IMG/VR virus record: IMGVR_UViG_3300017963_000192 | Location: 124,001-188,000 of that record | DNA: 64,000 nt | Reading direction: 5' to 3' (one strand) | Shown: positions 2,278 to 18,068 of the stretch, piece by piece | Layout of the letters: each line of letters opens with the position of its first letter | How positions within the stretch are numbered: position 1 is the first letter of the stretch | Position numbers and translations under genes: made by a program | Notes under the pieces: model-generated | Told to the model about the DNA's origin: nothing | The model's input: the letters and a program-made list of their open reading frames with translations, nothing else | Database searches by the model: none

Positions 2278-3444
2278 TTATGAACTCATCCAGCCAGGTA
2301 TAGTAGCTGAAGATTTAACAGCACACGCAACCGAACGTGGGTTAACAATTACTTGACTGATTTGCTCAAGGAATAACCATCCATAGGCTGGCTGGTTAAA
2401 CACGAACATATCAGCAGGAAGTACTGTAAGCTCTACCCTTATAGGCATTGCTCCAAGATATCTTCCTTCTGTAACAGCGAAGATAACGCCTTCAGGAACT
2501 GAAACGTTTTCAATTCCAGCTTCGTCAACACCCGCAGTTACGAATATGTTAACGCCCCAAATACTTCCAAAAATACCTGTTAAGAGAAGATCTCTTGAGG
2601 TAATTGGATCGTAATCGATTGCGTTGATGTTTTTCTTCAAGTCACCAAGTTCCGCCCTATTCATAATGAACTTGTCAACAAGTAATCTGTGTCTTTCAAC
2701 TTCGTATTGAAGTGTTTCAAGAACAGATTTGCTTATTGTTGAAGTAACATTAATCTGTGAGTTCTCAAGCGTAGATGCTTGGTAAAGCTCTTTAAGACCA
2801 TTTCTATCTTCTTTCAGCATAATCTGAAAGGTGGTCTTGTCGTGTGTTCTGTCTACGATGTCATACTGTCTTTGTGCTATCTCTGAGATAGTGATGATTG
2901 GTCGTGCAGTTACTAAGAATTCAGGTGGGAAAATCCTGTTTCCTTTAACTACAGTCTCAACTGTCTGACCATCTTCTTGGATAATAAGAGCAGTAACGTT
3001 TACGTCTTTTTCATAGGAGTTAATCTGACCTTGTGCCAGATTGTGAGTCCTATATACCTGTCTGATGAATCCTTCATAGTCTAGTCTATCAAGGATGAGT
3101 GGAATCATCTCTGCTCCAAATCGTAGCCTTTCAGCTTCGTCTGCCGCAAATACAGACTCAACGATTCTTTGCTTTTCTTCTGGAGTGTAAAAAGATTGTG
3201 CTTGTTTTCCTGGTCTCTGATACTGTGCTCGAAGTCCTGCGAACTTCATTTGCTGGTTTATTAAGTCTTGGTGATCATACGCATTAAGATTGCCTTTTGA
3301 GTCAAACATGTCTTCCTTGGATTCTACAAGTCTTCCGGCAGAGTTTTGTCCACCAAAAGATTTAGGGTTTAACAGCCTTTCGTCATATTTCTTTGCTATT
3401 GCAGCAGTTTTGACAGTTTTCTTTTCCATTTTTTCAGCCCACAT
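2278..3444 (-). CDS. major capsid protein (HK97 fold)
   Basis: 388 aa; PLILDRLDYEGFIRQV, RTHDKTTFQIMLKED, GIFGSIWGVNIFV, GWLFLEQISQVIVNPRSV; last gene of scaffold-decoration-capsid block; strong GGAGG RBS. Confidence 0.85.
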   Translation of the reverse strand: MWAEKMEKKTVKTAAIAKKYDERLLNPKSFGGQNSAGRLVESKEDMFDSKGNLNAYDHQDLINQQMKFAGLRAQYQRPGKQAQSFYTPEEKQRIVESVFAADEAERLRFGAEMIPLILDRLDYEGFIRQVYRTHNLAQGQINSYEKDVNVTALIIQEDGQTVETVVKGNRIFPPEFLVTARPIITISEIAQRQYDIVDRTHDKTTFQIMLKEDRNGLKELYQASTLENSQINVTSTISKSVLETLQYEVERHRLLVDKFIMNRAELGDLKKNINAIDYDPITSRDLLLTGIFGSIWGVNIFVTAGVDEAGIENVSVPEGVIFAVTEGRYLGAMPIRVELTVLPADMFVFNQPAYGWLFLEQISQVIVNPRSVACAVKSSATIPGWMSS

Positions 3445-4178: not shown

Positions 4179-6212
4179 TTAGTATCCTCGCCTTTCACGG
4201 GATACATCTTCCCAATATTTACGAAATTCCTCTCTTCGATCTTTGCTTGCTTGAGTACCTCTAAGAGGAGCAGTGTCTTTTTCTTCAACACTCGCTGTTT
4301 TATCTCTCGAACTTTCCTCTGAAGATTCCTTTACAGGTTCCTGAGTTCCATCTTTTATTGTATAGTCCTGTACGAACTTTGCAATCTTTGTAAATTCGTG
4401 AATATCTTTTTCCATAAATGTCTCAAAAGCTTCTTTCATAATCAATTTCTGATTATCTTCATAACCATCTATAAATGAATTATGAGCAATAGCTTCAGCA
4501 GCCTCTTTCTCAATACCATACTCGACAAGATTAGTAATCATTGCCTCTTTAAGAGGACAATCAAGTATGCCTTTCAATTGCTGAAGTGATGCCAATTCAA
4601 CAGCGAGCTTTGCTTTATTAACATTGTTTTCAACGCTGTGCTGTCTAATTCTCTCAGCAACTTCTACAGAAACTTTTCCTTTCTGTGCTTTAAGATTAGA
4701 ATCAAGACCATCTGGATGAATAGTTGGAGCTAACTTATCCTTTGCAGGTTGTTGCTTAATCTCCTTATTAATTTCATTAGCTTGATCTTTTGCAGTCTGT
4801 GCGTTAATAGGATCTTGGTTTTGCTTGTTTAAATCCTTAAAAGGATATAGCTGTGCTTCCTTTTTCATTTCTGATAACCTCGTTTTTATTTTGTCGATTA
4901 CATTAGAAGCCGTAATCTCCGAAATTTCATCTTCAGAAGCTTTCTTTTTCTCTTTCTTTTCACTCTTTGATCCTTTCTCTCCTGTTGTTACTTTCATAGC
5001 ATCATCACTCCCCTTTCCTCTAGTAATGTTTCCTGGAGTACCGGCAGTACCTTCTTTTGTCTCCTCATCATCGTCACTTTTTTCTCCGCACTCGTCATCA
5101 TCTTCTTCCGCTTGCTTAACAACCTCAGTTTCTTTACTGGCAACAGCTTCCGGTTTCTTGTCTTCTTCTTTGTCTTCTTTCTTTTCGAAAGGACTCTTTG
5201 ACTTTTCTAAAGTACCTTTGCCTTTGTCCATTTCACCTTCAAGATCATCGAAATCTTTTTTAGGAATACCTGCGTCTCCTTTAAGACCTTCGCCTTTCTC
5301 AAGCCAATCTACAAGCTCTTGAATTGCGTCTTTTAATTTACTTATGATTCCTTCTAATCCGCCACCTGCTGGTTTAATGTCTGCGATTCCACCTGGCTCG
5401 CCCATACCCAGCGCGTCAAGACCAGCTAGTCTTATACGAGTATCATTGTACTTTTTTAAAAGAGCTTCAACTCTTCTTCTAGACGATGATAGTCCCTCGA
5501 CCACACTAGAAACATCAGTAGCTTCTTTGAGTTCTAAAACTCCATCCTTTAGTTGAACTTTTCTCATTAGAACACTCCTTTTAGTATTTTGGTTTGAACT
5601 TTCCTTTGGCGGGTTTACACCCGTTGTATCGTTGTCTGGTTTTTTAGCTAATTGAGTAGGTTGGGGTGTTCCGACCGATTGACTAGTGGGAGGTAGTTGT
5701 GTAGGTTTTCCTACATCAACTCCGACTAACGACTGATCTTCCTTTTCTTCTTCAGGTTTTTTCATTAAAACATCTTTGAATAATTGCTGAACGTCTTCTA
5801 CGTCCCTATAATCAATTAAATCTTGAATTCGATCAGTTCTCCAACCTTCTTCTATTAAAGTATCTAGCAATGAATCTAGATCTTCTATTTCATCTCTTTT
5901 AACTATCTTATTAATATCTTTTCTTAAACTTGACAAAGAGTCATCGTTTAATTGTTCTTCTGGCGATTTTTGAGGAACTGCTCCTGGTACGGGAGGTTTA
6001 GCTCCAGTTCCAGGGGGTGCTCCTACTCCACCTAAAGGAGGTGCTCCAGCTTGACCCGTAGGTTTAACTTGCTTTCCTCCGCCTTGTTGTGCTGGAGGTC
6101 CTAGCTTATTAGGGTCAGGAGGAGTCTTGCTCCCTTCTCCTTGTGTTGGTGTATGTAAAGAGGGCAATTCAGTTAAATTCGGATTACCCGCACTATCCAT
6201 TGTTTCAGGCAT
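4179..6212 (-). CDS. putative head scaffolding/core protein
   Basis: 677 aa; Pro/Gly-rich N-terminus, acidic/Lys-rich coiled segments, many KxA motifs; position upstream of capsid. Confidence 0.6.
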   Translation of the reverse strand: MPETMDSAGNPNLTELPSLHTPTQGEGSKTPPDPNKLGPPAQQGGGKQVKPTGQAGAPPLGGVGAPPGTGAKPPVPGAVPQKSPEEQLNDDSLSSLRKDINKIVKRDEIEDLDSLLDTLIEEGWRTDRIQDLIDYRDVEDVQQLFKDVLMKKPEEEKEDQSLVGVDVGKPTQLPPTSQSVGTPQPTQLAKKPDNDTTGVNPPKESSNQNTKRSVLMRKVQLKDGVLELKEATDVSSVVEGLSSSRRRVEALLKKYNDTRIRLAGLDALGMGEPGGIADIKPAGGGLEGIISKLKDAIQELVDWLEKGEGLKGDAGIPKKDFDDLEGEMDKGKGTLEKSKSPFEKKEDKEEDKKPEAVASKETEVVKQAEEDDDECGEKSDDDEETKEGTAGTPGNITRGKGSDDAMKVTTGEKGSKSEKKEKKKASEDEISEITASNVIDKIKTRLSEMKKEAQLYPFKDLNKQNQDPINAQTAKDQANEINKEIKQQPAKDKLAPTIHPDGLDSNLKAQKGKVSVEVAERIRQHSVENNVNKAKLAVELASLQQLKGILDCPLKEAMITNLVEYGIEKEAAEAIAHNSFIDGYEDNQKLIMKEAFETFMEKDIHEFTKIAKFVQDYTIKDGTQEPVKESSEESSRDKTASVEEKDTAPLRGTQASKDRREEFRKYWEDVSRERRGY

Positions 6213-6337: not shown

Positions 6338-6844
6338 TTACATTATTAGAGATTCGAAAAGACTTTTATCTCCTTTATCTTTTTCCGGTTCTTCTCTCTC
6401 TATACTAAGAGGAACTCCGGTTATATCTCCTGATTCTCCTGTTGGAAGTTCTGTTTTTTCTTCTTCAAGTTCCATTTTACCTTTTTCTTTAGGTATTGCT
6501 CTTTCATCGATTGGAGGAAGATCAGTACTTTCTGGAAGTTCTTCGGAAACTTCAGACATGGTTGGATCGGAAACACCTATGTCATTATCTTGTTTGTTAT
6601 AAAATTCATAAAATTCTTCAGGAGTATCAAATTTTAGTTCCATACCTCCTTGTTTTATCCCAAACTTTTTATTAATTTCATAATTAACATAAGCCCATGT
6701 ATATTTAAACTCATCTACGGTAACTTCAGCTTTTTTAGCCCATTCAAAAAAGGCAGTATCTAAATCCATAACACCTTTTGTATTACTTATAAAGTCCCAA
6801 AAGCTCGCTACATGATCTTTTACTTTTTCTTTATTAAGAGCCAT
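6338..6844 (-). CDS. hypothetical acidic virion protein
   Basis: GGAGG RBS; FWDF..DTAFFEWAKK..TW segment resembles FWKY..EDVFIDWVEK..IW in 7632-9413. Confidence 0.6.
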   Translation of the reverse strand: MALNKEKVKDHVASFWDFISNTKGVMDLDTAFFEWAKKAEVTVDEFKYTWAYVNYEINKKFGIKQGGMELKFDTPEEFYEFYNKQDNDIGVSDPTMSEVSEELPESTDLPPIDERAIPKEKGKMELEEEKTELPTGESGDITGVPLSIEREEPEKDKGDKSLFESLIM

Positions 6845-6925: not shown

Positions 6926-6962
6926 TTGACTTTTATCAAAAAGTAATGTATATTTAATGTAT
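6926..6962 (+). promoter_or_regulatory. sigma70-like promoter
   Basis: TTGACT (6926-6931), 17 nt, TATATT (6949-6954). Confidence 0.65.
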
Positions 6963-7640
6963 ACTAAAAAGAGGTTGGTGTATATGCATTCAAACTTATC
7001 GTACATAAAAGAGTTCAAGGAAGATAATTTTTATAACATGAATTATTATGATTTAGAATTTTGGAGAGTTTTAGAATATTCTCTTTATCTTTTATATTCA
7101 AGACCTGTTGACCCAGACTTTGGGCAAGCACCAAAAAATTTTAACCCTATTTTAAGATGTGCTGGTATTGGTTTGTTTGATCCTTATATGATTGGTGGTA
7201 GCGAGGCTCGATATTTAGGTGTTGAAGGTTGGAAAGCTTGGCCAGAAAAAAACGGTTTAGAAAGAACCGTATTGTTATTAGAAAAAAATGTTGATGCTAT
7301 AAATAATCCAAACTTTTACAATAAACCTATTGTAGGAGAAACAAAGTATACAAGACACAGCCTATTAATAACAAATCATTTTATGTTTACAAAGGAAGTC
7401 ATTTCAGAAAATGAGATTATAATAAATTTTTGTAATATGAAAACCAAAAAGTTTAAGAGAGTTCACATAAAAAATTTAAGCATAATTAAAGATATGGTTT
7501 TCAACAAACAAAACTATGATGAAAATTTGATAAAATCAAATGTAGTTGATGGTTCTAATCTAGAAATAAAGGATGAAAATGTTAAAGAAATTCTAAAAAG
7601 GTTAGGTTTTTTAGAATCTGAAATAATCTATTTAAAATAA
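6957..7640 (+). CDS. hypothetical protein (counter-oriented insert in head module; true start likely the second ATG near 6984)
   Basis: 227-aa ORF with own promoter and GAGGT RBS. Confidence 0.6.
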   Translation: MYTKKRLVYMHSNLSYIKEFKEDNFYNMNYYDLEFWRVLEYSLYLLYSRPVDPDFGQAPKNFNPILRCAGIGLFDPYMIGGSEARYLGVEGWKAWPEKNGLERTVLLLEKNVDAINNPNFYNKPIVGETKYTRHSLLITNHFMFTKEVISENEIIINFCNMKTKKFKRVHIKNLSIIKDMVFNKQNYDENLIKSNVVDGSNLEIKDENVKEILKRLGFLESEIIYLK

Positions 7641-9413
7641 TGCAACTTCTTCAACAGGTTCAATCTCCTCACCATATGGAGCAACTTCATAAAAATAAGA
7701 TCTTCTGTTTATAGGGTTTCCTCCAACAGAATCTCTTTCATTTATAGTTATTTTTATGTGTCTTGTTTCTCTTGAAGTTGCCAAAACTATTTTTGCAAAT
7801 GAACTCATAGCTTCTTGACCAGCTAATGTTTCTAATGCTTCAGAAACTCTTCTAAAAGCCTCCTCTTCATCGTTTATATACATAAATCTTGACATTACAT
7901 CTTTAACAACGTTATACCCAATATCTGAACCAGTTACCGAAATAAGTCTGCCCCCAACTTTATCCCATTCAATGTAACCTCGTATTGCAGGAAAGCCCTC
8001 TGATTCAATTAAATAATCACCAATCGAATGTCTTTCTTCAGTAGCCTCTTTCTCTCTATCTAATTCAAATGCATCAAGAACATCTTGACCTATTTTATTC
8101 CAAATATCAGTAACTTCTTTTATTGATAAATTCTCTTTTTCTACCCAATCAATAAAAACATCTTCTATTGTAGATACTCCTTTAACGTTGCTTGCGTATT
8201 TCCAAAATTCTTCAGATCTACTTTCTATTTTTTGGATGTATGTCTCTCCTATTTGTAATTCCTCTTCAATCCATTGTTTTGCTGCGGCTTGACATTCGTT
8301 GAGATTTCCCTTATCTTCTAATACCGAATGCATTTTCTTTAGAATTTCTCTCTCATCTTTTATATCTAAATCTTTTGCAATATCTGCTATTGATTTTGCA
8401 CTACCAACAGTTTGAATTTGTCTCGTGAATTCTCCTAATTTATCTATAACATTATCGTGAGATGCCGCTTTAGGCATATCCCCTTCTTCTGGTTCTTTTT
8501 TTGTTTCTTCTGGATTTCCTCCCTCAAGTCCACCTTTTTCTGCCTCTCCTGGTCTTCCTATGTTGGTTTCGGCTATCTCTGCTATTAATTCTGCATCTTC
8601 TTCAGTAACTTGCATACCAGTATTTTGAGAAATTAAATTAGGATCTCTTGAAGTTAATATTTTTCCTGTATCAGAAGTAATATCTTTTAAATCTTCTTCA
8701 GTAAGTACCGTTTCTGCAACTTTGATTCTATCAAAATTTTCGTAACTTATTTTATTATAATTTTCTATAGTATCTTTAAGTTTTTGATACCACCCTCTTA
8801 AAGGATTGGAAATCTCATCAGTTTCGTTTTCGTCAACCATTTGTGCTTTTTCTAACACAAAAGCAACAAACTTCTTTATAATTTCATCAGAGATATACCT
8901 TTTAATAGACTCTTTATCTTCAGTAACACCTTCTGGTGCTGGAGTCTCTGGTACGCTTGAAATGTCACTTTCTAAAACAGCATCCTCTTGAGCCCCCCTA
9001 ACTTTTAGGGGGAGTTCTGGGTTTGTTAGTCTATGTAACAGTTCCCTTATTCTACTTGCTTGTTTTAATAAAACGTTATCTAAAGAAGCCATTGGTTGTT
9101 CTCCTCTTTCCTTTTTAGATTTATAAGTTACATGCAATTGCATCTCATTTTGAAAAGCCCTATCAGTATGGTACTTTTCTTTAAATTGTTTCACAAGTTT
9201 TGACACTTCTTTTTTAGTAGCCAGTTCTATTGTGTCTACTTTAACACCACCCTCATAAATATCAACTAAGTAACCTTTTCCAACTTCAGCACCTGGTCTT
9301 TTTTTCTTAATAAAAATATCAACGCCAGCACCTGGGGTAACTTTTTCTCTACGTTTTGTTTCATCTTGAGAAGTGTCTTCCTCTTCGTGTATGTCTTCTT
9401 TAATTACTGGCAT
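7632..9413 (-). CDS. hypothetical acidic virion (head) protein
   Basis: 593-aa Glu-rich ORF next to the protease; KQAS/KAAS/KYAS motifs. Confidence 0.6.
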   Translation of the reverse strand: MPVIKEDIHEEEDTSQDETKRREKVTPGAGVDIFIKKKRPGAEVGKGYLVDIYEGGVKVDTIELATKKEVSKLVKQFKEKYHTDRAFQNEMQLHVTYKSKKERGEQPMASLDNVLLKQASRIRELLHRLTNPELPLKVRGAQEDAVLESDISSVPETPAPEGVTEDKESIKRYISDEIIKKFVAFVLEKAQMVDENETDEISNPLRGWYQKLKDTIENYNKISYENFDRIKVAETVLTEEDLKDITSDTGKILTSRDPNLISQNTGMQVTEEDAELIAEIAETNIGRPGEAEKGGLEGGNPEETKKEPEEGDMPKAASHDNVIDKLGEFTRQIQTVGSAKSIADIAKDLDIKDEREILKKMHSVLEDKGNLNECQAAAKQWIEEELQIGETYIQKIESRSEEFWKYASNVKGVSTIEDVFIDWVEKENLSIKEVTDIWNKIGQDVLDAFELDREKEATEERHSIGDYLIESEGFPAIRGYIEWDKVGGRLISVTGSDIGYNVVKDVMSRFMYINDEEEAFRRVSEALETLAGQEAMSSFAKIVLATSRETRHIKITINERDSVGGNPINRRSYFYEVAPYGEEIEPVEEVALF

Positions 9414-9440: not shown

Positions 9441-10325
9441 TTATGCCACTTTTAAATTTTCTAATCTATATATTAATTGATCAAACTGATTTGATAGTCT
9501 CTTTTTTTCGCTAATTGTACTAGCGTCCTTAATCATTCTATATATTGTGTTCATAAGATATATAACTTCTTGACCTTCTTCTGTATTAGCTACTTTAAGT
9601 AATCTTCCAGGAAGTATATCACTAACAGCATCAATAACGTATGCAGTATTACATGCGGGACTAGAAACTACAGACAATTCATAAAAATCCACACCTTTTA
9701 GTAATTCTGCAACTCTTCTCCCGTTATACCTTCCACCTCTTTGATATGTGAGGTGTGAGCACATATCAGATTCCTTAACAATCTTTTTACCACAACATGT
9801 TGCTATTGAATATTTAATAGAACATCCCATAGAAACAGGAACTCTTGTAGGATATTTTTGAAGAGTTCTAGCAATACTCGGTGCTTTTTTAGAATCCAAA
9901 CCATACAGACACACAACGTGACCATCTTCATAATCCTTAGTCATCATCATAGAATCGAAAAGCAATCCTATAGAATTTTCAAAAGACTGACTCTGGTGAT
10001 CTTTATAAAGAGCGGCAGTTCTAAATGTTTGGTATCTTGGTATCCCTTTTTCTGGGTGAATCTCTTCCAATTCAGTACGATCAAAATAATCAGCATTTTT
10101 ATTAACCTTAGATTCCCAAATACCTTTACCGTATTTACCATAGAAATCGCCAAAGTCTAATGCTCTTGTTGTACCGTAAATATAATCTTCAACAATTGGA
10201 GAAAGCCAATGCGTTCCTCTTTTAGTTTCAATTATTTCAGCTATTTTGTCCTTGTCTTTTTTACTGAACTCTTTGAATTGTTTATAGGTACTCGTTCTTC
10301 CGTAAATTGGTCTTACATTACTCAT
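9441..10325 (-). CDS. prohead maturation protease
   Basis: NKNADYF, YKDH (His), VSMGC (catalytic Ser), FYELSVVSSPAC; CCG..CSH zinc insert. Confidence 0.8.
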   Translation of the reverse strand: MSNVRPIYGRTSTYKQFKEFSKKDKDKIAEIIETKRGTHWLSPIVEDYIYGTTRALDFGDFYGKYGKGIWESKVNKNADYFDRTELEEIHPEKGIPRYQTFRTAALYKDHQSQSFENSIGLLFDSMMMTKDYEDGHVVCLYGLDSKKAPSIARTLQKYPTRVPVSMGCSIKYSIATCCGKKIVKESDMCSHLTYQRGGRYNGRRVAELLKGVDFYELSVVSSPACNTAYVIDAVSDILPGRLLKVANTEEGQEVIYLMNTIYRMIKDASTISEKKRLSNQFDQLIYRLENLKVA

Positions 10326-10547: not shown

Positions 10548-11303
10548 TTAAATATTATCCATCATTCTTCTTTGTTCTTTAATTTTCTTTTTATCTATAA
10601 GGTGAGATTCACTTATAAAATCTATATCCACATTTAAATGCAAATCATCACCCTCTATTTTAGTTACAATTATTTTAGGAGTTTCAAAATTAGGAACTCC
10701 CTCAATACCTCCAGAGATATCTTCAGCCAAAATCTCTCTAAACAAGTAATCCTCTTCTTCAGTTGAAAAATAAATTGAAATTGCATAGTTAACATCATCT
10801 TCGGTAAGTTCTCTTTCCTCATCAGCACTATAAAGAATATCTTCAACAGCTTTTAATAAAAGAGACAAACTCACTTTACTATCAAATGATGCATCTCCTT
10901 CTGGCATTATATACTCTTGTCCATAATCATCTTCTTCTTTGTAAAAAGATAGATTAACATTAAGGTTTTCGACATTAGTTTTAAATTGGTTAGCAATTTT
11001 TACATCTGGAGAATCTTCAAAAATTGCTGTTTTCAAGAGTTCATTTATCCCATCAATATTCTTTAAATTCATTCTTAAACTCCTTTCTTCAGCTTCTTTT
11101 TCCATCTTTTTTAACTTTGTATAATAATCTGGTATCTCGTAAAGGTGATCGAGTGCTATAAGTTCAGCAACTTCTCTATTATTAGTATGTTCCATTTCAA
11201 CTTCAATACCCATATCTAATTGTTTTTGATCAACCTCGTTCGGAGTTAAATGTTTTCCAATCCCTTCCCAATTATCTGTATTAATTGTTACAGAAAACTT
11301 CAT
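10548..11303 (-). CDS. DUF5661-like N-terminal domain virion protein
   Basis: QLDMGIEVEMEHT..IALDHLYEIPDYYTKLKKME. Confidence 0.65.
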   Translation of the reverse strand: MKFSVTINTDNWEGIGKHLTPNEVDQKQLDMGIEVEMEHTNNREVAELIALDHLYEIPDYYTKLKKMEKEAEERSLRMNLKNIDGINELLKTAIFEDSPDVKIANQFKTNVENLNVNLSFYKEEDDYGQEYIMPEGDASFDSKVSLSLLLKAVEDILYSADEERELTEDDVNYAISIYFSTEEEDYLFREILAEDISGGIEGVPNFETPKIIVTKIEGDDLHLNVDIDFISESHLIDKKKIKEQRRMMDNI

Positions 11304-11368
11304 GGCAATTCTCCTTTTAACCTTTTAAATTTAAAAAGTAATAAAATTTTGGCTAATTTTAAGTTTGT

Positions 11369-11827
11369 TTAGATAAGTTTTCTTGATTCCAATGCCATTT
11401 TTAAGAACTCCATAAATAACTGTAATGTTTCAGCATCCATCTCTACAAGACACGTTTCTGGTAGGGTTTCTTGCTGTTCTTCTGTTATAAATAAAATGGC
11501 ATTATCAATAATTTGTGATGGGTTTTCTTGCGGTAAAATTTGTTCAAAATCCTCTATACACTCTTCTTCTTGACTACTCAATCCATCAGGATATGTTTTA
11601 TAATATAATCTTTCAGCATCCTCATCAGATATGTTAAAATCATCCATTATTAAATCTTTTATTTGTTGTTTGTCTAATCCTTTTTGCTGTCTAATCCATA
11701 CAATTATTTCTTGTTCTTTTTGTGAGTCAAATCTTTGATAAGCCTGGGGTTTAGCAGGAGAATTTATAATTGAAGGATTGCTCTGCATCATAAAAGCAAA
11801 TTTTCTTTTTATTAATTCTTTATACAT
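11369..11827 (-). CDS. hypothetical protein
   Basis: 152-aa ORF in the head operon. Confidence 0.55.
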   Translation of the reverse strand: MYKELIKRKFAFMMQSNPSIINSPAKPQAYQRFDSQKEQEIIVWIRQQKGLDKQQIKDLIMDDFNISDEDAERLYYKTYPDGLSSQEEECIEDFEQILPQENPSQIIDNAILFITEEQQETLPETCLVEMDAETLQLFMEFLKMALESRKLI

Positions 11828-11829
11828 AA

Positions 11830-11976
11830 TTATCTGTTTATTTCCTTAAAAGAAAATTTCTTATCAATTACTGTTACAACAATATTTAAATAATATTCCT
11901 TATTGCATTTAGAACATTTTACAAAATAAGAATCTTCCAATATTAAAAAAGATTCATTTCCACAAGTACATTTCAT
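11830..11976 (-). CDS. small zinc-ribbon protein (48 aa, not in ORF track)
   Basis: MKCTCGNESF..VKCSKCNKEY; fills the gap between neighbouring genes exactly. Confidence 0.6.
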   Translation of the reverse strand: MKCTCGNESFLILEDSYFVKCSKCNKEYYLNIVVTVIDKKFSFKEINR

Positions 11977-11979
11977 TTT

Positions 11980-12225
11980 TTATTGCAAAAGAATTCTCTC
12001 TAAATCCTCAATTGCAAGTTCTTCTTTTTCTTCAGCAGCCATAAAATCTTTGCACTTTTGTAAGTATTCACCCATCATTTGTTTTTTCTCATCAATAACG
12101 GCATGTTCCTCTTGTTCCGCACTTTGAAGATCTTGTAAAGCATCCCTTGCTTCCTCAACTTGTTGTTCTGCATCCATTGATTTTCTTACTAGTTCATTTA
12201 TATTATTTGCTTTTCTAAATTCCAT
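11980..12225 (-). CDS. small coiled-coil putative internal head protein
   Basis: GAGGT RBS; N-terminal MEFRKANNINELV motif. Confidence 0.65.
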   Translation of the reverse strand: MEFRKANNINELVRKSMDAEQQVEEARDALQDLQSAEQEEHAVIDEKKQMMGEYLQKCKDFMAAEEKEELAIEDLERILLQ

Positions 12226-12236
12226 TTTAACACCTC

Positions 12237-12614
12237 TTATATTGTGTATCCTAACAACTTCAAAAAATCATCTCTATAATCCATAATTTTTTGAATGGTT
12301 TCCGCATCTTGTTGCACAGAAAGTTTATTAATTAACCCATTTGCAAATTCATTTATTAATTCTTGAAGTTCTTGCGTAGTCCATTTAAATGCTTGATCTT
12401 CTTTTACCATTTCTTCCATACTTTTAATATTTCTAAACTCCATTTCAAATCCTCCATGTATCTTCATATCCCTTAAATGAGATTTAGCCTCTTCCTCCGT
12501 TTTGTGGGAAGATATTATTTTCCCGTTCTTATGATCTTTTATAACCCAAGGTGCTGATTCACCTTTAGAGTTTTTATGACCTTCTACGTGTTGTATGTAA
12601 CTATACTTGTTCAT
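12237..12614 (-). CDS. putative internal head protein
   Basis: WVIKDHKNGKIISSHKTEEEAKSHL module; internal MEFRNIKSMEEMV motif with its own GGAGG RBS. Confidence 0.6.
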   Translation of the reverse strand: MNKYSYIQHVEGHKNSKGESAPWVIKDHKNGKIISSHKTEEEAKSHLRDMKIHGGFEMEFRNIKSMEEMVKEDQAFKWTTQELQELINEFANGLINKLSVQQDAETIQKIMDYRDDFLKLLGYTI

Positions 12615-13251
12615 CTTTTATTTTAAAATTTATTGTTCCTTTTTCTTTGTCTAAATAAATAAAAGCCTCTTCAATATTTTCGATGTTGTTTTCTTTAGCT
12701 ATTTTTCTCAAAGTTCTTTCAATATTAAAATAATCATCATCACTTAATTTCATTTCGTTTGCATAAACGTTGCGTCTAAAAAAATCAGCTTCTTGTTCCA
12801 TTCCATTTTCCATAAGAAAGTCATATACTTGATGTTTTAATTCAGTATTCCCTTCTGTTTCTCTTTTTACATATGATATATTACCATTAATAAAACTCTC
12901 CGCAAGTTTCATTACAATTCTTTCTTGCATCCCTGATTCTTCAGAAGATTTTCTCTTTTGTGATAATGGTCCTGATTTTCCAGGTCCATGAACTTTTGTT
13001 GGTTCGTCTAAATATTTCTTTGGTATTTTATCTATAATAGTTCTCATGATATACTCCTTTGATTTATTATATTTTTTACCGCTTTCTTCAATAGCTTTTA
13101 TCTGATCTAAAAGTTTTTTAGGAGCACCTTTAGATTTTAGATAACTAATCCATTGTCCAGGGGTTCTCCCTTTCTTTGCAAATTTGTCGTAAAAATTATT
13201 TATCTTCATTTCTCTTGATATTTCCATATTACTCTCCTTTATGTTTTTCAC
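12601..13251 (-). CDS. hypothetical virion protein (start probably MEISR near 13227)
   Basis: ORF in head operon; AGGAG RBS before the second Met. Confidence 0.55.
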   Translation of the reverse strand: MKNIKESNMEISREMKINNFYDKFAKKGRTPGQWISYLKSKGAPKKLLDQIKAIEESGKKYNKSKEYIMRTIIDKIPKKYLDEPTKVHGPGKSGPLSQKRKSSEESGMQERIVMKLAESFINGNISYVKRETEGNTELKHQVYDFLMENGMEQEADFFRRNVYANEMKLSDDDYFNIERTLRKIAKENNIENIEEAFIYLDKEKGTINFKIKDEQV

Positions 13252-13723
13252 TATGAAAAACTATTTTTTCTTTTGACTCCTCTTCAAGAGGAAAATCTTC
13301 ATATTTAAATATATCTGGCATATCTTCTGGGACATCAACAGTTTTTTTGTTTGATGCAACATCTAACATCTTTAAAATTTCATCATATATTTTAGGATTT
13401 GGATTTTTTACACCTAAACTTCTGGCTACTTCTTTAAATTTATCTAAATTAATAAAAGGAGATGCCTCTAATTCATTGTTTATAATGTATATATAAGCCT
13501 CTATATCATTTCTCCAATTAGGTAAATGCCCATACAAATTTTCTAGCTTTCCCCAAGTAACATCGTAGTATCGACTATCTGCTTTTCTATCTAATACTTT
13601 GTTTATAAGATTTGACAATCTTATTTCATCTCGTATCCGAGACGCTATGTCTCTTCTTTTTTTAGAAGATAACAATTTATTGATGTCTACAGCATTTCTA
13701 AAATTCATATTATAATTCCTCAA
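13229..13723 (-). CDS. putative internal head protein
   Basis: MNFRNAVDINKLL motif; RKAD site. Confidence 0.55.
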   Translation of the reverse strand: MRNYNMNFRNAVDINKLLSSKKRRDIASRIRDEIRLSNLINKVLDRKADSRYYDVTWGKLENLYGHLPNWRNDIEAYIYIINNELEASPFINLDKFKEVARSLGVKNPNPKIYDEILKMLDVASNKKTVDVPEDMPDIFKYEDFPLEEESKEKIVFHSEKHKGE

Positions 13724-16700
13724 ACGATTTTTTTAACTCATCATTTAATAGGTGTGGATAGTCAATCCATAATCTTAAATTTTCTACAAATATAAGTACT
13801 TCATCTGTTTCGTGACCGTTAAGACACTTACCATTGACATCCCACAACTTACCTTGTTTTAACTTATAATTAACTTCGGGACTATCCTTGAATTTTTCAC
13901 TTAATTTAAAACCTCTAGGATTATCTGGATCATCAGATATTGGTTCAATTTGATTGAAAACTTTGTATGTACTCATTTCTTCTTGAGATAAATCAAAATT
14001 GCTTTGTTTAAAAGCTTTTCTTATAACTTTTTCATTAGAGTCATTTACAACTGTTATATGTTTAAGTAGACTTTCAGTAAAACTACACTCTTCCATACCA
14101 ACCCAATTAGATATATAGAGATTTTTACCTTGATTAAAGACAGGAATCATTCCTTTCTTTTGAATTTTTTCATAAGAAAGAGTATTCCTAATTAAATTGT
14201 TTTTAGCATCTTTATCCGGTATATCACTATATTTCTTCTCTAGTTTTTCTTTTTGACTTGTCTCCCATTCCTCTAAATCAACAACATCTAACACAAAAAT
14301 TATATTATCATAATCTTTCTTTATAAACTTACCCACTTTATTTAAAAACCTAGAAAGTTGAGGAATATATTCAATAGGACAATCCTTTACATTTATTCCA
14401 GCTATTGAATGTGAACGATGTCTTTGAATATGAGGATCAACATTGTTTCCAAATTCTTCATCATCAAATCCTTCAATACAAGGATACATTATCAAAATTT
14501 CGTTTTTAGCAGAAATTATAGAACCTAGATTTCTACCTTTGCTTAACAATTGTTTAACACCATATCTTAAACCATCATTTTTAACGACATTACTTAATTT
14601 AACAGTATAAACCCCTTGTTCCTGGTACCCTTTTAACTGTCCGTATGCAAAGCAAGTGTTACCAAGATTTCTTAAATGTTTGAAAATTTCAGATTTATCT
14701 AAATTTGAAGATGCAAACATTTTAGTCCATTCCTCAAATTCTCTTGATAGCATTAAATCAGAATAATCTGTTAAATCATCACTATCAGAATAATATTCCT
14801 GATGTATAGGGTAGAATTCAGTAACGCTATATGAATGGAGTTTGCCTTGTTTATATAAATTGGTGAGTATTTTAGAAATATCTTCATTTTCTTGAAGTAT
14901 CCCCTCTTTAAAATCACCATTGCTCTTTTTATCAATCACACTTAATTTATTATTTAAATTAATTAGTAATAATTTAACTTCAGAAGGTATACTAGGTGAT
15001 TCAAGATTTTTGAACCAAGTATCATCATCAACAGGATGAAGATTTTTAGTTATTTCACTATCAAAGTCAGCTTCTTTAACTTTTATTTCTTCTGGACTTG
15101 GTTTAGCTGTTTCAACAGTTCCCTCTTTTCCAATAAATTCTCTTGATTCAGATTCTAAGTCTTCAATATCTTCTTTTGAAATTTCTTCTGTTTCTGCTGT
15201 TTTTTTCTTACCAAGTCCCAACTTGTCTTTAATCTTTGCCGTAACACTACCCGTAGGAGGAGGTGTTCCACCAAGAGGTGAGCCAACACCAGCAGCACTA
15301 CCAACTAATGGATGAATAAAAGCACCAATCTTTTCTTCGAGTTCTTTTTGTTTCTTTTTATTACTTAATTCGTCTTCTAAGCTCATCCCCATTAATTGAA
15401 GAAGTGTTATAGCACTTATAGGTCCTTTACCTTGAGCATAAACATTATTCATAAAAGTCATAAATGCTTGGTCGTCACGCATCATTAATTTTTTATGCCA
15501 TAGTATTTTAGGAACAATGAGACGTTCTTCTAATTCTCTTCCAGATCTACTTACTCTGTATTGTCCAACTAATTCTTTCTTGTCCCTTCTGTACCAATTA
15601 TTTTTCTCTGCCATTATTCTAAAAAATTTATCTTGTATCCAAAGTACTTGAAATAAGTCTCTTTTAGCTTTATACCTTGATAGCTGAACTTGAAGACCAA
15701 CATTTGCTGAATTATATGTTCCTACATTATCAACAAGATAGCTATGGCTGTTTTCAACAGTTAAATTATAAACTTTTTTAGTATTTTTAATCGATTCAAC
15801 AGATTTTACCATTAAATAAACATAATTATCATCAACAAATGCTTTTTGTCCTTTAAATTTATGAGAATCATCAAAGTCAAACGTGCATTCTTCTTCCCAA
15901 ATTAATTTTGCCAAATCAAATGCAAATTTACCATAAATATCGAGTCTAATAATTGGTTTTCTTTTATATTTTGAAGTTAAATTTCTCTTATTGTTATCTT
16001 GTATTGTCCAATTAACTGGAAAACCTATTTGAGCTAATATCAATTCGATTTGATTTGCTAAAATTTTTGAGGTGGTAGTAAAATGAACAGTATGTTGTCC
16101 ATTTCTTTTATTTATTTGATGACAACCATCCCCTCTAAAAATTCCTTTAATCAGTTCTTTCTTTAAATTTAAAGACCAGCCCATCACTTCTTTAGATAAT
16201 TGTTTTTTGTGAGAATATTCTCCAGCGTGTTTCTTAAACCAATTTACTTTATCTTTAACTATATTTTGAGTGATTGATCTTAAATGCAGTGCCCCTTGCT
16301 TGTTAGAAAAACTTGAAATTGGAATTCCTTCTATTGCACAAAGATTTGTTACATCATCTATGTATTTACTTTCATTTTCTCCAAAACATAATCTAATTCC
16401 ATGCAATTCTTTTGTGGTGTGGTGCTTTTCATAACAACCTTCAGCTATAAAATAACCAAGAAGTCTGGCTGATGTTTCTGTAGTATTTGTATCAACTTCT
16501 ACAAAATTTCTTGGAATCATTAAGTAATCCCATTGTTTGATTTCTTCTGCTTTTAATTTCTTAATAGGGTTATAATTTATAGGTAATCCACTTATATATT
16601 TTTTTCTAATTGTTGTCCTTCCTATATCTATTGGATTTAATTTAATTCTTGGTGATTTTCCAATAGAATGAGCGTAGAGTTTGCCCGCATTAACCTCACG

Positions 16701-18068
16701 ACCACATCCACACGCACATTTACGAGGCCATGTCCACACAGACCACTTGTGATTATCAGTACATTTAAACTTCTTTCCTCCCCAAAGGGTTATTTCAATT
16801 ATATTGTTAGGAATCCCCTCGTCCCAATTATCTGTAACTTTTTGTTCCATACCATCTTTATCAATAACAGAATCCCCTACTTCAATATCTTCAACGTTTT
16901 TATATCCTTGAGGAGTTGTGATTTTTGTACCTTTTGTAAAACAAGCATAAGTTGATTCCCCACTTAAAAATTGTTTTCCTACTCCAAGAGCAACCATTTT
17001 CTTCTCTGTAATGTCTGACCACTCTTTTTCAAGTCTCATAACCTTGTCTGCAACAGTAACATATTCAACATTTAAGCCATAATGATAGATTAAACTAAAG
17101 TTTGGGTCGAAAGTTGACTGTTGTAACATTTGAGCCAATGCTCTTTGGTGCGTTTCGTTAGGAATCCACCCCTTGTTAGCGTCACCTAGTTTAAAAATCT
17201 TTAAAGGATAGATAAAGTTGTCAGCAATTGTGATTTGAGCCTCTCTTAATTTGTCTTCGTACATCAAAAGCCTAAAAATTCGGCTTATTATTGAAGTTCC
17301 TCTAACATCATAAGGGTTACTTCTTCTTGCAATGTGTGTAACCTCATCTGGATCAAGTGTTATGTTTTTTCCTGTTAAAACTCTTCTAAAAACGTCTTGT
17401 GGGAGTCTTCCTTTAAGTCTTTGATCTTCGGGTTTTGTTGAATGTACTAAAGATTTAAGTTCATCGTCTGGTATAAGCTCAATTACGCTTTCCTGGTCTG
17501 CAAAAGGAGTGAATCTTACTTCAATAAAATCAGGATTATGAACTATAATATCTTCCCACATTCCAGTTTTACTGTTCCAAGGAGTGTGAATGAAAATTTC
17601 TCCAATTTTCATAAATTCCAAGTCTATTGCGGGTAATTTCGAGAAAAATCCTGTTTTTTCAATACATTCTTGAATATGTGTGTTAATATGAGGGTCATCA
17701 ACTACAATTTCTGCTTTTGAATAAGGTAATTCTGCATGAACATCTAAAACGGCTCCTACTAATTCATCATGATCGTAAAACCATCTACACCATCTATTTA
17801 TTTGCTTTAAAGTTCGTGGTAAATAAATAGCTGTGGTAGTAATCTCTGGATCATAGAATCTTCTGGAAGGATTTCTTAATATATTATTTCCCGCACCGTA
17901 TGCGGCAATTTGATTAAGAAGATTTCCACCACCTAATCCCAAAGATTGAAACTGACCACTCGTTCCTTTCTTAATTCTTTCCCTATCTGTTTCAGCATTA
18001 ATTGTTCTTGGTAACATATCCTGAAAACTTTCAGGTAAAGGAACATTTTCTTGATTGATTGTAGGCAT
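13710..18068 (-). CDS. portal protein with intein and long C-terminal extension
   Basis: WCRWFYDHDELVGAVLDVHAELP, THIARRSNPYDVRGTSII, PLKIFKLGD, GESTYA/SANVGLQ. Confidence 0.85.
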   Translation of the reverse strand: MPTINQENVPLPESFQDMLPRTINAETDRERIKKGTSGQFQSLGLGGGNLLNQIAAYGAGNNILRNPSRRFYDPEITTTAIYLPRTLKQINRWCRWFYDHDELVGAVLDVHAELPYSKAEIVVDDPHINTHIQECIEKTGFFSKLPAIDLEFMKIGEIFIHTPWNSKTGMWEDIIVHNPDFIEVRFTPFADQESVIELIPDDELKSLVHSTKPEDQRLKGRLPQDVFRRVLTGKNITLDPDEVTHIARRSNPYDVRGTSIISRIFRLLMYEDKLREAQITIADNFIYPLKIFKLGDANKGWIPNETHQRALAQMLQQSTFDPNFSLIYHYGLNVEYVTVADKVMRLEKEWSDITEKKMVALGVGKQFLSGESTYACFTKGTKITTPQGYKNVEDIEVGDSVIDKDGMEQKVTDNWDEGIPNNIIEITLWGGKKFKCTDNHKWSVWTWPRKCACGCGREVNAGKLYAHSIGKSPRIKLNPIDIGRTTIRKKYISGLPINYNPIKKLKAEEIKQWDYLMIPRNFVEVDTNTTETSARLLGYFIAEGCYEKHHTTKELHGIRLCFGENESKYIDDVTNLCAIEGIPISSFSNKQGALHLRSITQNIVKDKVNWFKKHAGEYSHKKQLSKEVMGWSLNLKKELIKGIFRGDGCHQINKRNGQHTVHFTTTSKILANQIELILAQIGFPVNWTIQDNNKRNLTSKYKRKPIIRLDIYGKFAFDLAKLIWEEECTFDFDDSHKFKGQKAFVDDNYVYLMVKSVESIKNTKKVYNLTVENSHSYLVDNVGTYNSANVGLQVQLSRYKAKRDLFQVLWIQDKFFRIMAEKNNWYRRDKKELVGQYRVSRSGRELEERLIVPKILWHKKLMMRDDQAFMTFMNNVYAQGKGPISAITLLQLMGMSLEDELSNKKKQKELEEKIGAFIHPLVGSAAGVGSPLGGTPPPTGSVTAKIKDKLGLGKKKTAETEEISKEDIEDLESESREFIGKEGTVETAKPSPEEIKVKEADFDSEITKNLHPVDDDTWFKNLESPSIPSEVKLLLINLNNKLSVIDKKSNGDFKEGILQENEDISKILTNLYKQGKLHSYSVTEFYPIHQEYYSDSDDLTDYSDLMLSREFEEWTKMFASSNLDKSEIFKHLRNLGNTCFAYGQLKGYQEQGVYTVKLSNVVKNDGLRYGVKQLLSKGRNLGSIISAKNEILIMYPCIEGFDDEEFGNNVDPHIQRHRSHSIAGINVKDCPIEYIPQLSRFLNKVGKFIKKDYDNIIFVLDVVDLEEWETSQKEKLEKKYSDIPDKDAKNNLIRNTLSYEKIQKKGMIPVFNQGKNLYISNWVGMEECSFTESLLKHITVVNDSNEKVIRKAFKQSNFDLSQEEMSTYKVFNQIEPISDDPDNPRGFKLSEKFKDSPEVNYKLKQGKLWDVNGKCLNGHETDEVLIFVENLRLWIDYPHLLNDELKKSFEEL
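15711..16943 (-). mobile_element. LAGLIDADG intein in portal (411 aa)
   Basis: CFTKGT..KCTDNHKW..LLGYFIAEG..GIFRGDG..VGTYN|S. Confidence 0.9.

What the first reader, a model, noticed from the sequence alone, without database searches (positions are those of the whole stretch)
10548..13723. Shared 13-aa leader motif in four unrelated head-module proteins: possible capsid-targeting signal
Seen: MEFRKANNINELV (11980-12225, N-terminus), MNFRNAVDINKLL (13229-13723, near N-terminus), MEFRNIKSMEEMV (internal in 12237-12614, preceded by GGAGG) and MNLKNIDGINELL (internal in 10548-11303). By analogy with the T4 capsid targeting sequence on internal proteins, this may direct packaging. The internal copies suggest gene fusions or internal starts.
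Basis: partly seen in the sequence, partly recalled or inferred. Interest (0 to 1): 0.6.

Follow-up and report, generated by a model that had tools for sequence, protein, structure and literature searches.

The report
Portable protein tag in jumbo phages
A 16-residue peptide tag is attached to at least a dozen unrelated proteins of this uncultured 218-kb phage and to different proteins in its relatives; it most likely acts as an address label that loads them into the assembling phage head, as the T4 capsid targeting sequence does, but this is inferred from sequence only.

Summary
The four peptides are at the stated places. A profile built from them finds 12 clear copies plus one degenerate copy in the 217.7-kb genome: five in the head module, six at the N-termini of six consecutive genes about 100 kb away, and two among tail-side structural genes. 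It finds 34 copies above noise in nine related viral contigs. Reversed-sequence, shuffled and 596-Gb prokaryote controls stay at chance level.

Conservation is in the protein, not the DNA. The tagged proteins are unrelated outside the tag and include a deoxyribonucleotidase, a GNAT acetyltransferase and a DUF5662 protein. Most have no orthologue in close relatives.

The tag is portable. It sits N-terminally, between domains, or C-terminally. One nucleotidase carries it at the N-terminus in two genomes and at the C-terminus in a third. Models place it in flexible, low-confidence segments with a short helix.

Best reading (about 0.55): a docking peptide that recruits variable cargo into the prohead. 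It works like the T4 capsid targeting sequence but is position-independent, as encapsulin cargo peptides are. The receptor, any cleavage and virion presence are untested; one co-folding attempt gave no verdict.

The parts
13661..13708 (-). Tag copy 1: the first 16 residues of a 159-aa protein (gene 13229-13708). The ATG lies 2 nt after the portal stop codon.
   Evidence: 19.0 bits
12396..12443 (-). Tag copy 2: internal, residues 58-73 of the 125-aa protein (gene 12237-12614). It lies between a conserved three-strand, one-helix N-domain and a helical tail. It has an ATG with GGAGGA upstream.
   Evidence: (21.3 bits)
12178..12225 (-). Tag copy 3: the first 16 residues of an acidic 81-aa protein (gene 11980-12225). 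This is the best-scoring copy.
   Evidence: (27.2 bits)
11025..11072 (-). Tag copy 4: internal, residues 78-93 of the 251-aa protein (gene 10548-11303). It follows a DUF5661 domain (residues 23-70). It has an ATG with AAGGAG upstream.
   Evidence: 21.1 bits
5769..5816 (-). Degenerate copy at residues 133-148 of a 677-aa Gly/Pro/charge-rich head-module protein (gene 4179-6212). The orthologues in G2 and L005 carry a clear copy at this position.
9441..10325 (-). Prohead maturation protease. It is a candidate processing enzyme for tagged proteins and served as the anchor for finding relatives.
   Evidence: phrog_18299, E 1.9e-14
7632..9413 (-). Scaffold-like 593-aa protein with a conserved N-terminal domain (about residues 28-137). 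It is the candidate receptor by analogy with T4 and is untested. Its L-L-K-[KQ]-A segment (9039-9092) only loosely resembles the end of the tag.
13710..18068 (-). Portal protein interrupted by a LAGLIDADG intein. It forms the upstream border of the tagged head genes.
   Evidence: phrog_16240, E 3.6e-58
2278..3444 (-). Major capsid protein (HK97-type). Its N-terminus carries no tag.
   Evidence: (phrog_2522, E 5.3e-53)

Best explanation
The motif is a portable docking peptide of about 16 residues, whose second half forms a short helix. It marks otherwise unrelated proteins for recruitment into the assembling head (prohead core) of this jumbo myovirus and its relatives.

The tagged set has two parts. 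One is a group of small head-module proteins between portal and protease. The other is a fast-changing set of accessory proteins encoded elsewhere, including a 5'-3' deoxyribonucleotidase, a GNAT acetyltransferase and a DUF5662 protein. These would be packaged and possibly delivered with the DNA.

Functionally this resembles the T4 capsid targeting sequence. Unlike T4, the tag also works between domains and at a C-terminus, so it behaves like a short linear docking motif or an encapsulin cargo-loading peptide.

- **Shown:** the tag exists, is selected at the protein level, is portable, and sits outside folded domains.
- **Inferred:** the destination (head interior), the receptor (scaffold core or capsid inner surface) and any removal by the prohead protease.
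For: - **Copy number and specificity.** There are 12 clear copies plus 1 degenerate copy in the genome and 34 above noise in nine related contigs. Controls stay at chance level.
- **Protein-level selection.** Upstream DNA is 36% identical, which is background. Identical residues use identical codons in 175 of 287 cases, about what codon usage predicts.
- **Unrelated cargo.** Outside the tag there is no similarity. Families found: phrog_2643 deoxyribonucleotidase (E 2e-30), GNAT, DUF5662, DUF5661, and Rubrerythrin in a relative.
- **The tag is an add-on.** Nucleotidase homologues in other phages mostly align from residue 19-22 onward. DUF5662 homologues in G1 and G2 lack the tag.
- **Portability.** The nucleotidase is tagged N-terminally in G0 and G2 and C-terminally in G3. 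Domain order around the tag differs between genomes.
- **Location.** Five G0 copies lie between portal and MCP. In L038 and L039 the tagged gene lies directly upstream of the protease. Other copies lie among virion genes.
- **Structure.** The tag falls in low-confidence segments next to confidently folded domains, with a helix over its second half.
- **Cargo properties.** All cargo proteins are soluble. Seven of 12 G0 cargo genes have no orthologue in close relatives, as with the variable T4 internal-protein loci.
- **Precedents.** T4 CTS, P1 DarB and SPN3US propeptides.
Against: - There is no direct evidence that any tagged protein is in virions.
- The one co-folding attempt (scaffold residues 1-460 with a 36-residue tagged N-terminus) gave no verdict.
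- Six tagged genes lie far from the structural genes, and a nucleotidase is an unusual capsid cargo.
- Eight of 12 cargo proteins are strongly acidic, unlike the basic T4 internal proteins.
- The residue that would be P1 of a T4-type site is Glu in only 10 of 20 copies.
- The orthologue of the 159-aa protein in G1 lacks the tag.
- Several relatives show no copy within 10 kb of the protease. Their contigs are fragments, though, and one of them has copies elsewhere.
Confidence: 0.55

Rival explanations
1. The motif is mainly a recognition or cleavage element for the prohead protease. It would mark where propeptides are removed or domains are separated during head maturation, without itself directing packaging.
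For: - The protease gene lies next to the tagged head genes.
- Internal copies sit exactly between domains.
- The tag ends in a nearly invariant [KR]-x-[AS] after two hydrophobic residues. The scaffold has an invariant L-L-K-[KQ]-A after a variable linker.
- In T4 the targeting peptide is also the cleaved propeptide.
Against: - A cleavage site alone does not explain why cytoplasmic enzymes encoded 100 kb away carry it. It also does not explain why one enzyme keeps it at either end.
- The MCP N-terminus has no such motif.
- The scaffold segment does not fit the profile (5 bits or less).
- The I-x-E element is not conserved.
- This reading is compatible with the best explanation rather than exclusive of it.
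Confidence: 0.15
2. The motif is a docking tag for a destination other than the head interior. Candidates are the tail or baseplate, the cell membrane (as an amphipathic helix), or a phage-encoded chaperone or hub.
For: - Two G0 copies, three G5 copies and several G3 copies lie next to fibre-like or other non-head structural genes.
- The tag is moderately amphipathic (mean hydrophobic moment 0.38 against 0.23 for other N-termini) and slightly basic.
Against: - Positions 8, 10 and 11 are conserved polar residues, and F3, I9, L12 and K14 are nearly invariant. This argues for a specific protein partner, not lipid.
- The densest and most conserved placement is between portal, protease and MCP.
- 11% of ordinary N-termini reach the same hydrophobic moment.
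Confidence: 0.15
3. The shared sequence reflects nucleic-acid or translation-level constraints. It would be a repeated DNA element that promotes recombination, a favoured translation-initiation region, or hidden internal starts, with no function as a peptide.
For: - Every G0 copy begins with ATG and has an SD-like sequence upstream. This includes both internal copies, although only 6.3% of internal ATGs in this genome have one.
- The modules are clearly shuffled between genomes.
Against: - Flanking DNA is not conserved and codon identity is at the level expected from codon usage.
- Internal copies in G1 and L038 start with GTT and GTC.
- One copy is at a C-terminus.
- Conservation follows residue properties across genomes whose proteases are only 50-76% identical.
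Confidence: 0.05
4. The similarity is a remnant of common descent (paralogous N-termini) or chance in an AT-rich genome.
For: - Six tagged genes are in tandem, which could suggest duplication.
- One weak 41-residue similarity exists between two cargo proteins.
Against: - The cargo proteins belong to different families and show no other similarity.
- All chance controls are negative.
- The tag occurs at different positions of homologous proteins.
Confidence: 0.02

Closest known systems
Capsid targeting sequence (CTS) of phage T4 internal proteins IPI-III and Alt
   Same: Both are short peptides (10-20 residues) shared by otherwise unrelated and rapidly diversifying proteins, some of them enzymes. 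In both cases the phage has a portal, small core proteins, protease, scaffold and MCP in the same gene order. T4 cargo genes are likewise split between the head module and separate variable loci.
   Different: There is no sequence resemblance to the T4 peptide as I recall it (from memory, not tested). The phage is not T4-like: its nearest named relatives are Rctr197k, phiRSL1, Erwinia Y3 and Bxz1-type phages. The tag also occurs between domains and at a C-terminus. A Glu-ending cleavage site is not conserved. Much of the cargo is acidic.
N-terminal packaging signal of phage P1 DarB
   Same: It is an N-terminal segment (the first 30 residues) sufficient to direct a reporter into the capsid.
   Different: It is described for one protein, not as a motif shared by a dozen. 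The P1 capsid has no separate scaffold.
Propeptides of phiKZ/SPN3US ejection proteins (for example the identical 15-residue N-termini of SPN3US gp53 and gp54)
   Same: Both are from jumbo phages. The conserved N-termini sit on diverged head proteins and are proposed to act like a CTS.
   Different: Those proteins are paralogues, their propeptides are mostly over 100 residues, and cleavage follows an A/S/G-x-E motif. Here the carriers are unrelated and the tag is short and position-independent.
Cargo-loading peptides of encapsulins
   Same: Both are short, terminal, position-flexible peptides that load diverse enzymes into an HK97-fold shell. One relative links the tag to a Rubrerythrin/ferritin-like domain, the classic encapsulin cargo class (established knowledge).
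   Different: This is a complete tailed phage with portal, protease and tail, not a nanocompartment. I recall no sequence similarity, and binding to the capsid protein was not tested.

Membership tests
T4-type capsid targeting sequence | Short conserved peptide shared by otherwise unrelated proteins of one phage | tested here: met
   There are 12 clear copies and 1 degenerate copy in G0. The cargo is unrelated outside the tag.
T4-type capsid targeting sequence | Located at the extreme N-terminus of the precursor | tested here: not met
   Of 34 copies, 21 are N-terminal and 13 internal. One further copy is C-terminal on a nucleotidase.
T4-type capsid targeting sequence | Ends at a prohead-protease site with Glu at P1 (L/I-x-E) | tested here: inconclusive
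   I-[DN]-[ED] is present, but Glu occupies that position in only 10 of 20 copies. No cleavage data exist.
T4-type capsid targeting sequence | Phage encodes a prohead protease and scaffold core between portal and MCP | tested here: met
   Portal, protease, scaffold-like protein and MCP lie in that order.
T4-type capsid targeting sequence | Necessary and sufficient to bring a protein into proheads; cargo present in virions | not testable with these tools
   This needs virion proteomics or reporter fusions. The co-folding job gave no verdict.
T4-type capsid targeting sequence | Homology of the phage or peptide to T4 | tested here: not met
   The MCP's nearest relatives are Rctr197k (37% identity) and phiRSL1, Y3 and Bxz1-type phages (about 25%), not T4.
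Encapsulin cargo-loading peptide | Short peptide at either terminus of diverse cargo enzymes | tested here: met
   The same enzyme is tagged at the N- or C-terminus in different genomes.
Encapsulin cargo-loading peptide | Shell is an encapsulin (an HK97-fold protein without portal, tail or packaged genome) | tested here: not met
   This is a full phage head module with portal, protease and scaffold, plus tail-side genes.
Prohead protease cleavage motif | Same motif present at the maturation sites of MCP and scaffold | tested here: not met
   The MCP N-terminus lacks it. The scaffold segment scores 5 bits or less.

The most novel reading that the evidence does not exclude
The tag is a position-independent packaging 'zip code' used by a whole clade of uncultured jumbo phages. 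The set of proteins loaded into the capsid, and probably injected, could then be read directly from sequence. That set changes from genome to genome and includes enzymes (nucleotidase, acetyltransferase, DUF5662) and, in one relative, a ferritin-like domain. This would link phage capsid targeting mechanistically to encapsulin cargo loading.
Probability: 0.4. Interest if true: 0.8.

Novelty: new variant of a known kind. Interest (0 to 1): 0.62.

Why it matters
Shared capsid-targeting peptides have been demonstrated experimentally only in T4 and for one protein in P1. In jumbo phages, how dozens of internal or ejected proteins reach the head is still open.

A short, sequence-recognisable tag that works at either end of a protein would have three uses:
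- **Prediction.** It would let the packaged proteome of uncultured phages be predicted from sequence.
- **Candidate early-acting proteins.** It would point to enzymes that may act at the very start of infection.
- **A possible tool.** It would offer a compact handle for loading foreign proteins into large capsids, as the T4 CTS has been used.

The natural swap of the tag between the N- and C-terminus of one enzyme is an unusually clean argument for a modular signal.

Tried and rejected
- **Co-folding.** Scaffold residues 1-460 (with alignment) and the first 36 residues of a tagged protein scored 0.01 against a mark of 0.32. The tool gave no verdict, so this is not evidence either way.
- **Scaffold L-L-K-[KQ]-A segment as a further tag copy.** It fits the profile at 5 bits or less, below noise. 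Rejected as a copy and kept only as a lead for a shared protease site.
- **MCP propeptide as a tag carrier.** No motif is present.
- **Near and protein-level searches of GenBank phages.** The region, the 677-aa protein and a 36-residue tagged N-terminus all gave nothing.
- **Head region of Rctr197k.** No tag.
- **Foldseek of the conserved N-domain against the PDB.** No match at E 0.001 or better.
- **Tag pattern in prokaryote genomes, hoping for a host.** Only chance-level hits, which served as a control.
- **Strand bias of tagged genes.** Uninformative, because 79% of all genes are on that strand.
- **Literature on MCP maturation sites in phiRSL1-type relatives.** Nothing usable. There are no papers on DUF5661.
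Full report
**Setting**

The window is bases 124001-188000 of a single 217,703-bp virus contig of about 30% G+C. The flagged region lies in a head module on the minus strand. In order of transcription this module holds:
- a portal interrupted by a LAGLIDADG intein (13710-18068; phrog_16240, E 3.6e-58);
- seven small genes;
- a prohead protease (9441-10325; phrog_18299, E 1.9e-14);
- a 593-aa scaffold-like protein (7632-9413);
- a 168-aa protein;
- a 677-aa low-complexity protein (4179-6212);
- an Ig-like 232-aa protein;
- the HK97-type major capsid protein (2278-3444; phrog_2522, E 5.3e-53).

The capsid protein's nearest named relatives are jumbo myoviruses. Virus Rctr197k is 37% identical, and phiRSL1, Erwinia Y3 and Bxz1-type phages are about 25% identical. 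No DNA-level match exists in GenBank phages.

**The observation**

Three details change.
- The first ORF most likely starts at the ATG at 13708, two bases after the portal stop, so that copy is truly N-terminal.
- The conserved unit is 16 residues: M-[ND]-F-[RK]-x-[IAV]-x-x-I-[DN]-[ED]-L-[IL]-[KR]-x-[AS]. F3, I9, L12, I/L13, K/R14 and A/S16 are nearly invariant.
- The family is much larger than four.

A profile built from the copies finds 12 clear copies in the genome at 13-27 bits. The best reversed-sequence hit scores 7.6 bits. Ten copies begin at the first or second Met of their ORF. A thirteenth, degenerate copy sits at residue 133 of the 677-aa protein, where the orthologues in two relatives have a clear copy.

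Outside the window:
- Six copies head six consecutive genes at genome 25.3-30.1 kb.
- One heads a 154-aa gene among fibre-like genes at 108.9 kb.
- One heads a 293-aa gene at 88.9 kb.

Blind clustering of all 349 N-termini in the genome recovers a single family of nine. Shuffled peptides give clusters of at most two.

**Protein signal or DNA signal**

The 36 bases upstream of the copies are 36% identical, which is background for this composition. Where two copies share a residue they share the codon in 175 of 287 cases, close to what codon usage predicts. So the conservation is in the peptide.

Every copy in this genome has a Shine-Dalgarno-like sequence 6-10 bases upstream, including both internal ones. 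Only 6.3% of internal in-frame ATGs have that, against 64% of true starts. Internal initiation, or a recent fusion, is therefore plausible in this genome. In relatives, however, the equivalent internal copies begin with GTT and GTC, which are not start codons. The motif is thus maintained as part of the polypeptide.

**Cargo**

Outside the tag the carriers are unrelated. Recognisable ones are:
- a 5'-3' deoxyribonucleotidase (phrog_2643, E 2.2e-30);
- a GNAT acetyltransferase;
- a DUF5662 protein that itself hosts an HNH and zinc-finger intein;
- a DUF5661 protein.

The rest have no family. All are soluble and eight of twelve are strongly acidic.

The tag is an addition to its carriers. Nucleotidase homologues in other phages mostly align from residue 19-22 onward, and DUF5662 homologues in two close relatives lack the tag. 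Seven of the twelve cargo genes have no orthologue in those relatives. This turnover resembles that described for T4 internal-protein loci.

**Relatives**

The protease, and then a protease alignment, retrieved 14 IMG/VR contigs with proteases 50-76% identical. I fetched five of these or related contigs in full: G1 to G5.

A degenerate DNA pattern for the tag hit eight IMG/VR contigs. Seven belong to this clade, and three carry two matches each. The same pattern in 596 Gb of prokaryote genomes gave 14 scattered single hits with no homology to this phage, which is the chance level.

The census is 34 copies above noise in nine non-redundant contigs: 21 N-terminal and 13 internal. Several further evident copies fall below threshold. 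In L038 and L039 the tagged gene lies directly upstream of the protease.

**Portability**

This is the strongest new evidence.
- **One enzyme, either end.** The nucleotidase carries the tag on an 18-20-residue N-terminal extension in G0 and G2. In G3 it has no N-terminal extension and ends in a 24-residue C-terminal extension containing the tag.
- **A shared N-domain with variable tails.** A conserved domain of about 50 residues, with invariant G-H-K-N-S, A-P, S-S-H and H-L, is shared by seven head-module proteins. The tag follows it in four lineages, each with a different C-terminal part. One of these is a Rubrerythrin domain (PF02915, E 2.3e-6) with a weaker EncFtn-like match below Pfam's cut-off. 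In G2 the tag lies in front of that domain instead.
- **Reversible order with DUF5661.** DUF5661 precedes the tag in G0 and follows it in G3.

AlphaFold2 models place the tag in low-confidence segments beside confident domains.
- In the 125-aa protein the N-domain has pLDDT 84-94. Residues 52-63 are below 50, and a helix spans 66-76.
- In the nucleotidase the core has pLDDT 76-94. Residues 1-20 score 46-55, with a helix over 9-18.

**Interpretation**

These properties define a short, portable, protein-level docking motif. Four lines of inference point to the assembling head as the destination:
- the concentration of copies between portal, protease and capsid genes;
- the placement of the other copies among virion genes;
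- the presence of a protease and scaffold;
- the close functional parallel with the T4 capsid targeting sequence, the P1 DarB signal and the SPN3US propeptides.

I put this at about 0.55. That it is a portable docking tag of some kind I put at about 0.8. Position independence makes it mechanistically closer to encapsulin cargo-loading peptides than to a strict propeptide.

Whether the tag is removed is open. The I-x-E element has Glu in only half of the copies. The conserved [KR]-x-[AS] end, echoed by an invariant L-L-K-[KQ]-A in the scaffold, is a candidate protease site but is statistically unsupported.

**Limits**

- No virion or expression data were available.
- The only co-folding job returned no verdict.
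- The N-domain has no structural match.
- Several relatives are fragments, so absence of copies there means little.
- The host is unknown.

Noticed in passing
window 13710-18068 (-); L003 2277-6635; L004 3258-7553: The portal gene carries a LAGLIDADG-type intein (about residues 376-782), giving a 1452-aa precursor. Relatives split into intein-containing portals (about 1370-1450 aa) and intein-free ones (about 1020-1036 aa).
   Followed up: partly
L001 8901-10613 (-) = genome 26901-28613: The tagged DUF5662 protein is itself interrupted by an intein with an HNH endonuclease and C2H2 zinc fingers. Inteins usually sit in conserved active sites, so DUF5662 is probably an enzyme.
   Followed up: partly
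window 12237-12614 (-), residues 1-50; homologues in L003, L004, L030, L037, L038, L054: A small domain of about 50 residues (three strands and a helix) is confidently modelled and conserved in seven lineages of head-module proteins. It has no Pfam family and no PDB match.
   Followed up: partly
L003 7893-8492 (+): In a close relative the tag links that N-domain to a Rubrerythrin/ferritin-like domain, with a weak EncFtn-like match below the cut-off. A ferritin-like protein in a phage head module recalls encapsulin cargo.
   Followed up: partly
window 4179-6212 (-): A 677-aa protein lies between the scaffold and the MCP. It has long Gly/Pro-rich and charged low-complexity stretches and a conserved C-terminal third. 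It has no family match, and its role (second scaffold, decoration or core) is unknown.
   Followed up: partly
window 6338-6844 (-) and 7632-9413 (-): In relatives, a small protein of about 90-195 aa encoded downstream of the scaffold shares a 50-73-residue segment with scaffold residues 391-468. The window's own 168-aa protein at 6338-6844 occupies the equivalent position but was not itself compared.
   Followed up: no
L001 12589-13389 (-) = genome 30589-31389: A 266-aa ORF just upstream of the six tagged genes has a signal-peptide-like N-terminus and a pattern like an outer-membrane beta-barrel. This hints at a Gram-negative host.
   Followed up: no
genome 205017, 205826, 208064 (minus strand; outside the window): A second, smaller family of three similar N-termini turned up in the blind clustering of N-termini. 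They are probably paralogues.
   Followed up: no
L052 (IMG/VR contig of 111,658 bp) and the contig of L035/L051: A near-identical copy of the six-gene tagged cluster lies on a contig that IMG/VR classes as a provirus, as it does one more distant relative. If that classification is right, host flanks could name the host.
   Followed up: no
window 6957-7640 (+): A 227-aa ORF lies on the opposite strand inside the otherwise minus-strand head module. It was not examined.
   Followed up: no
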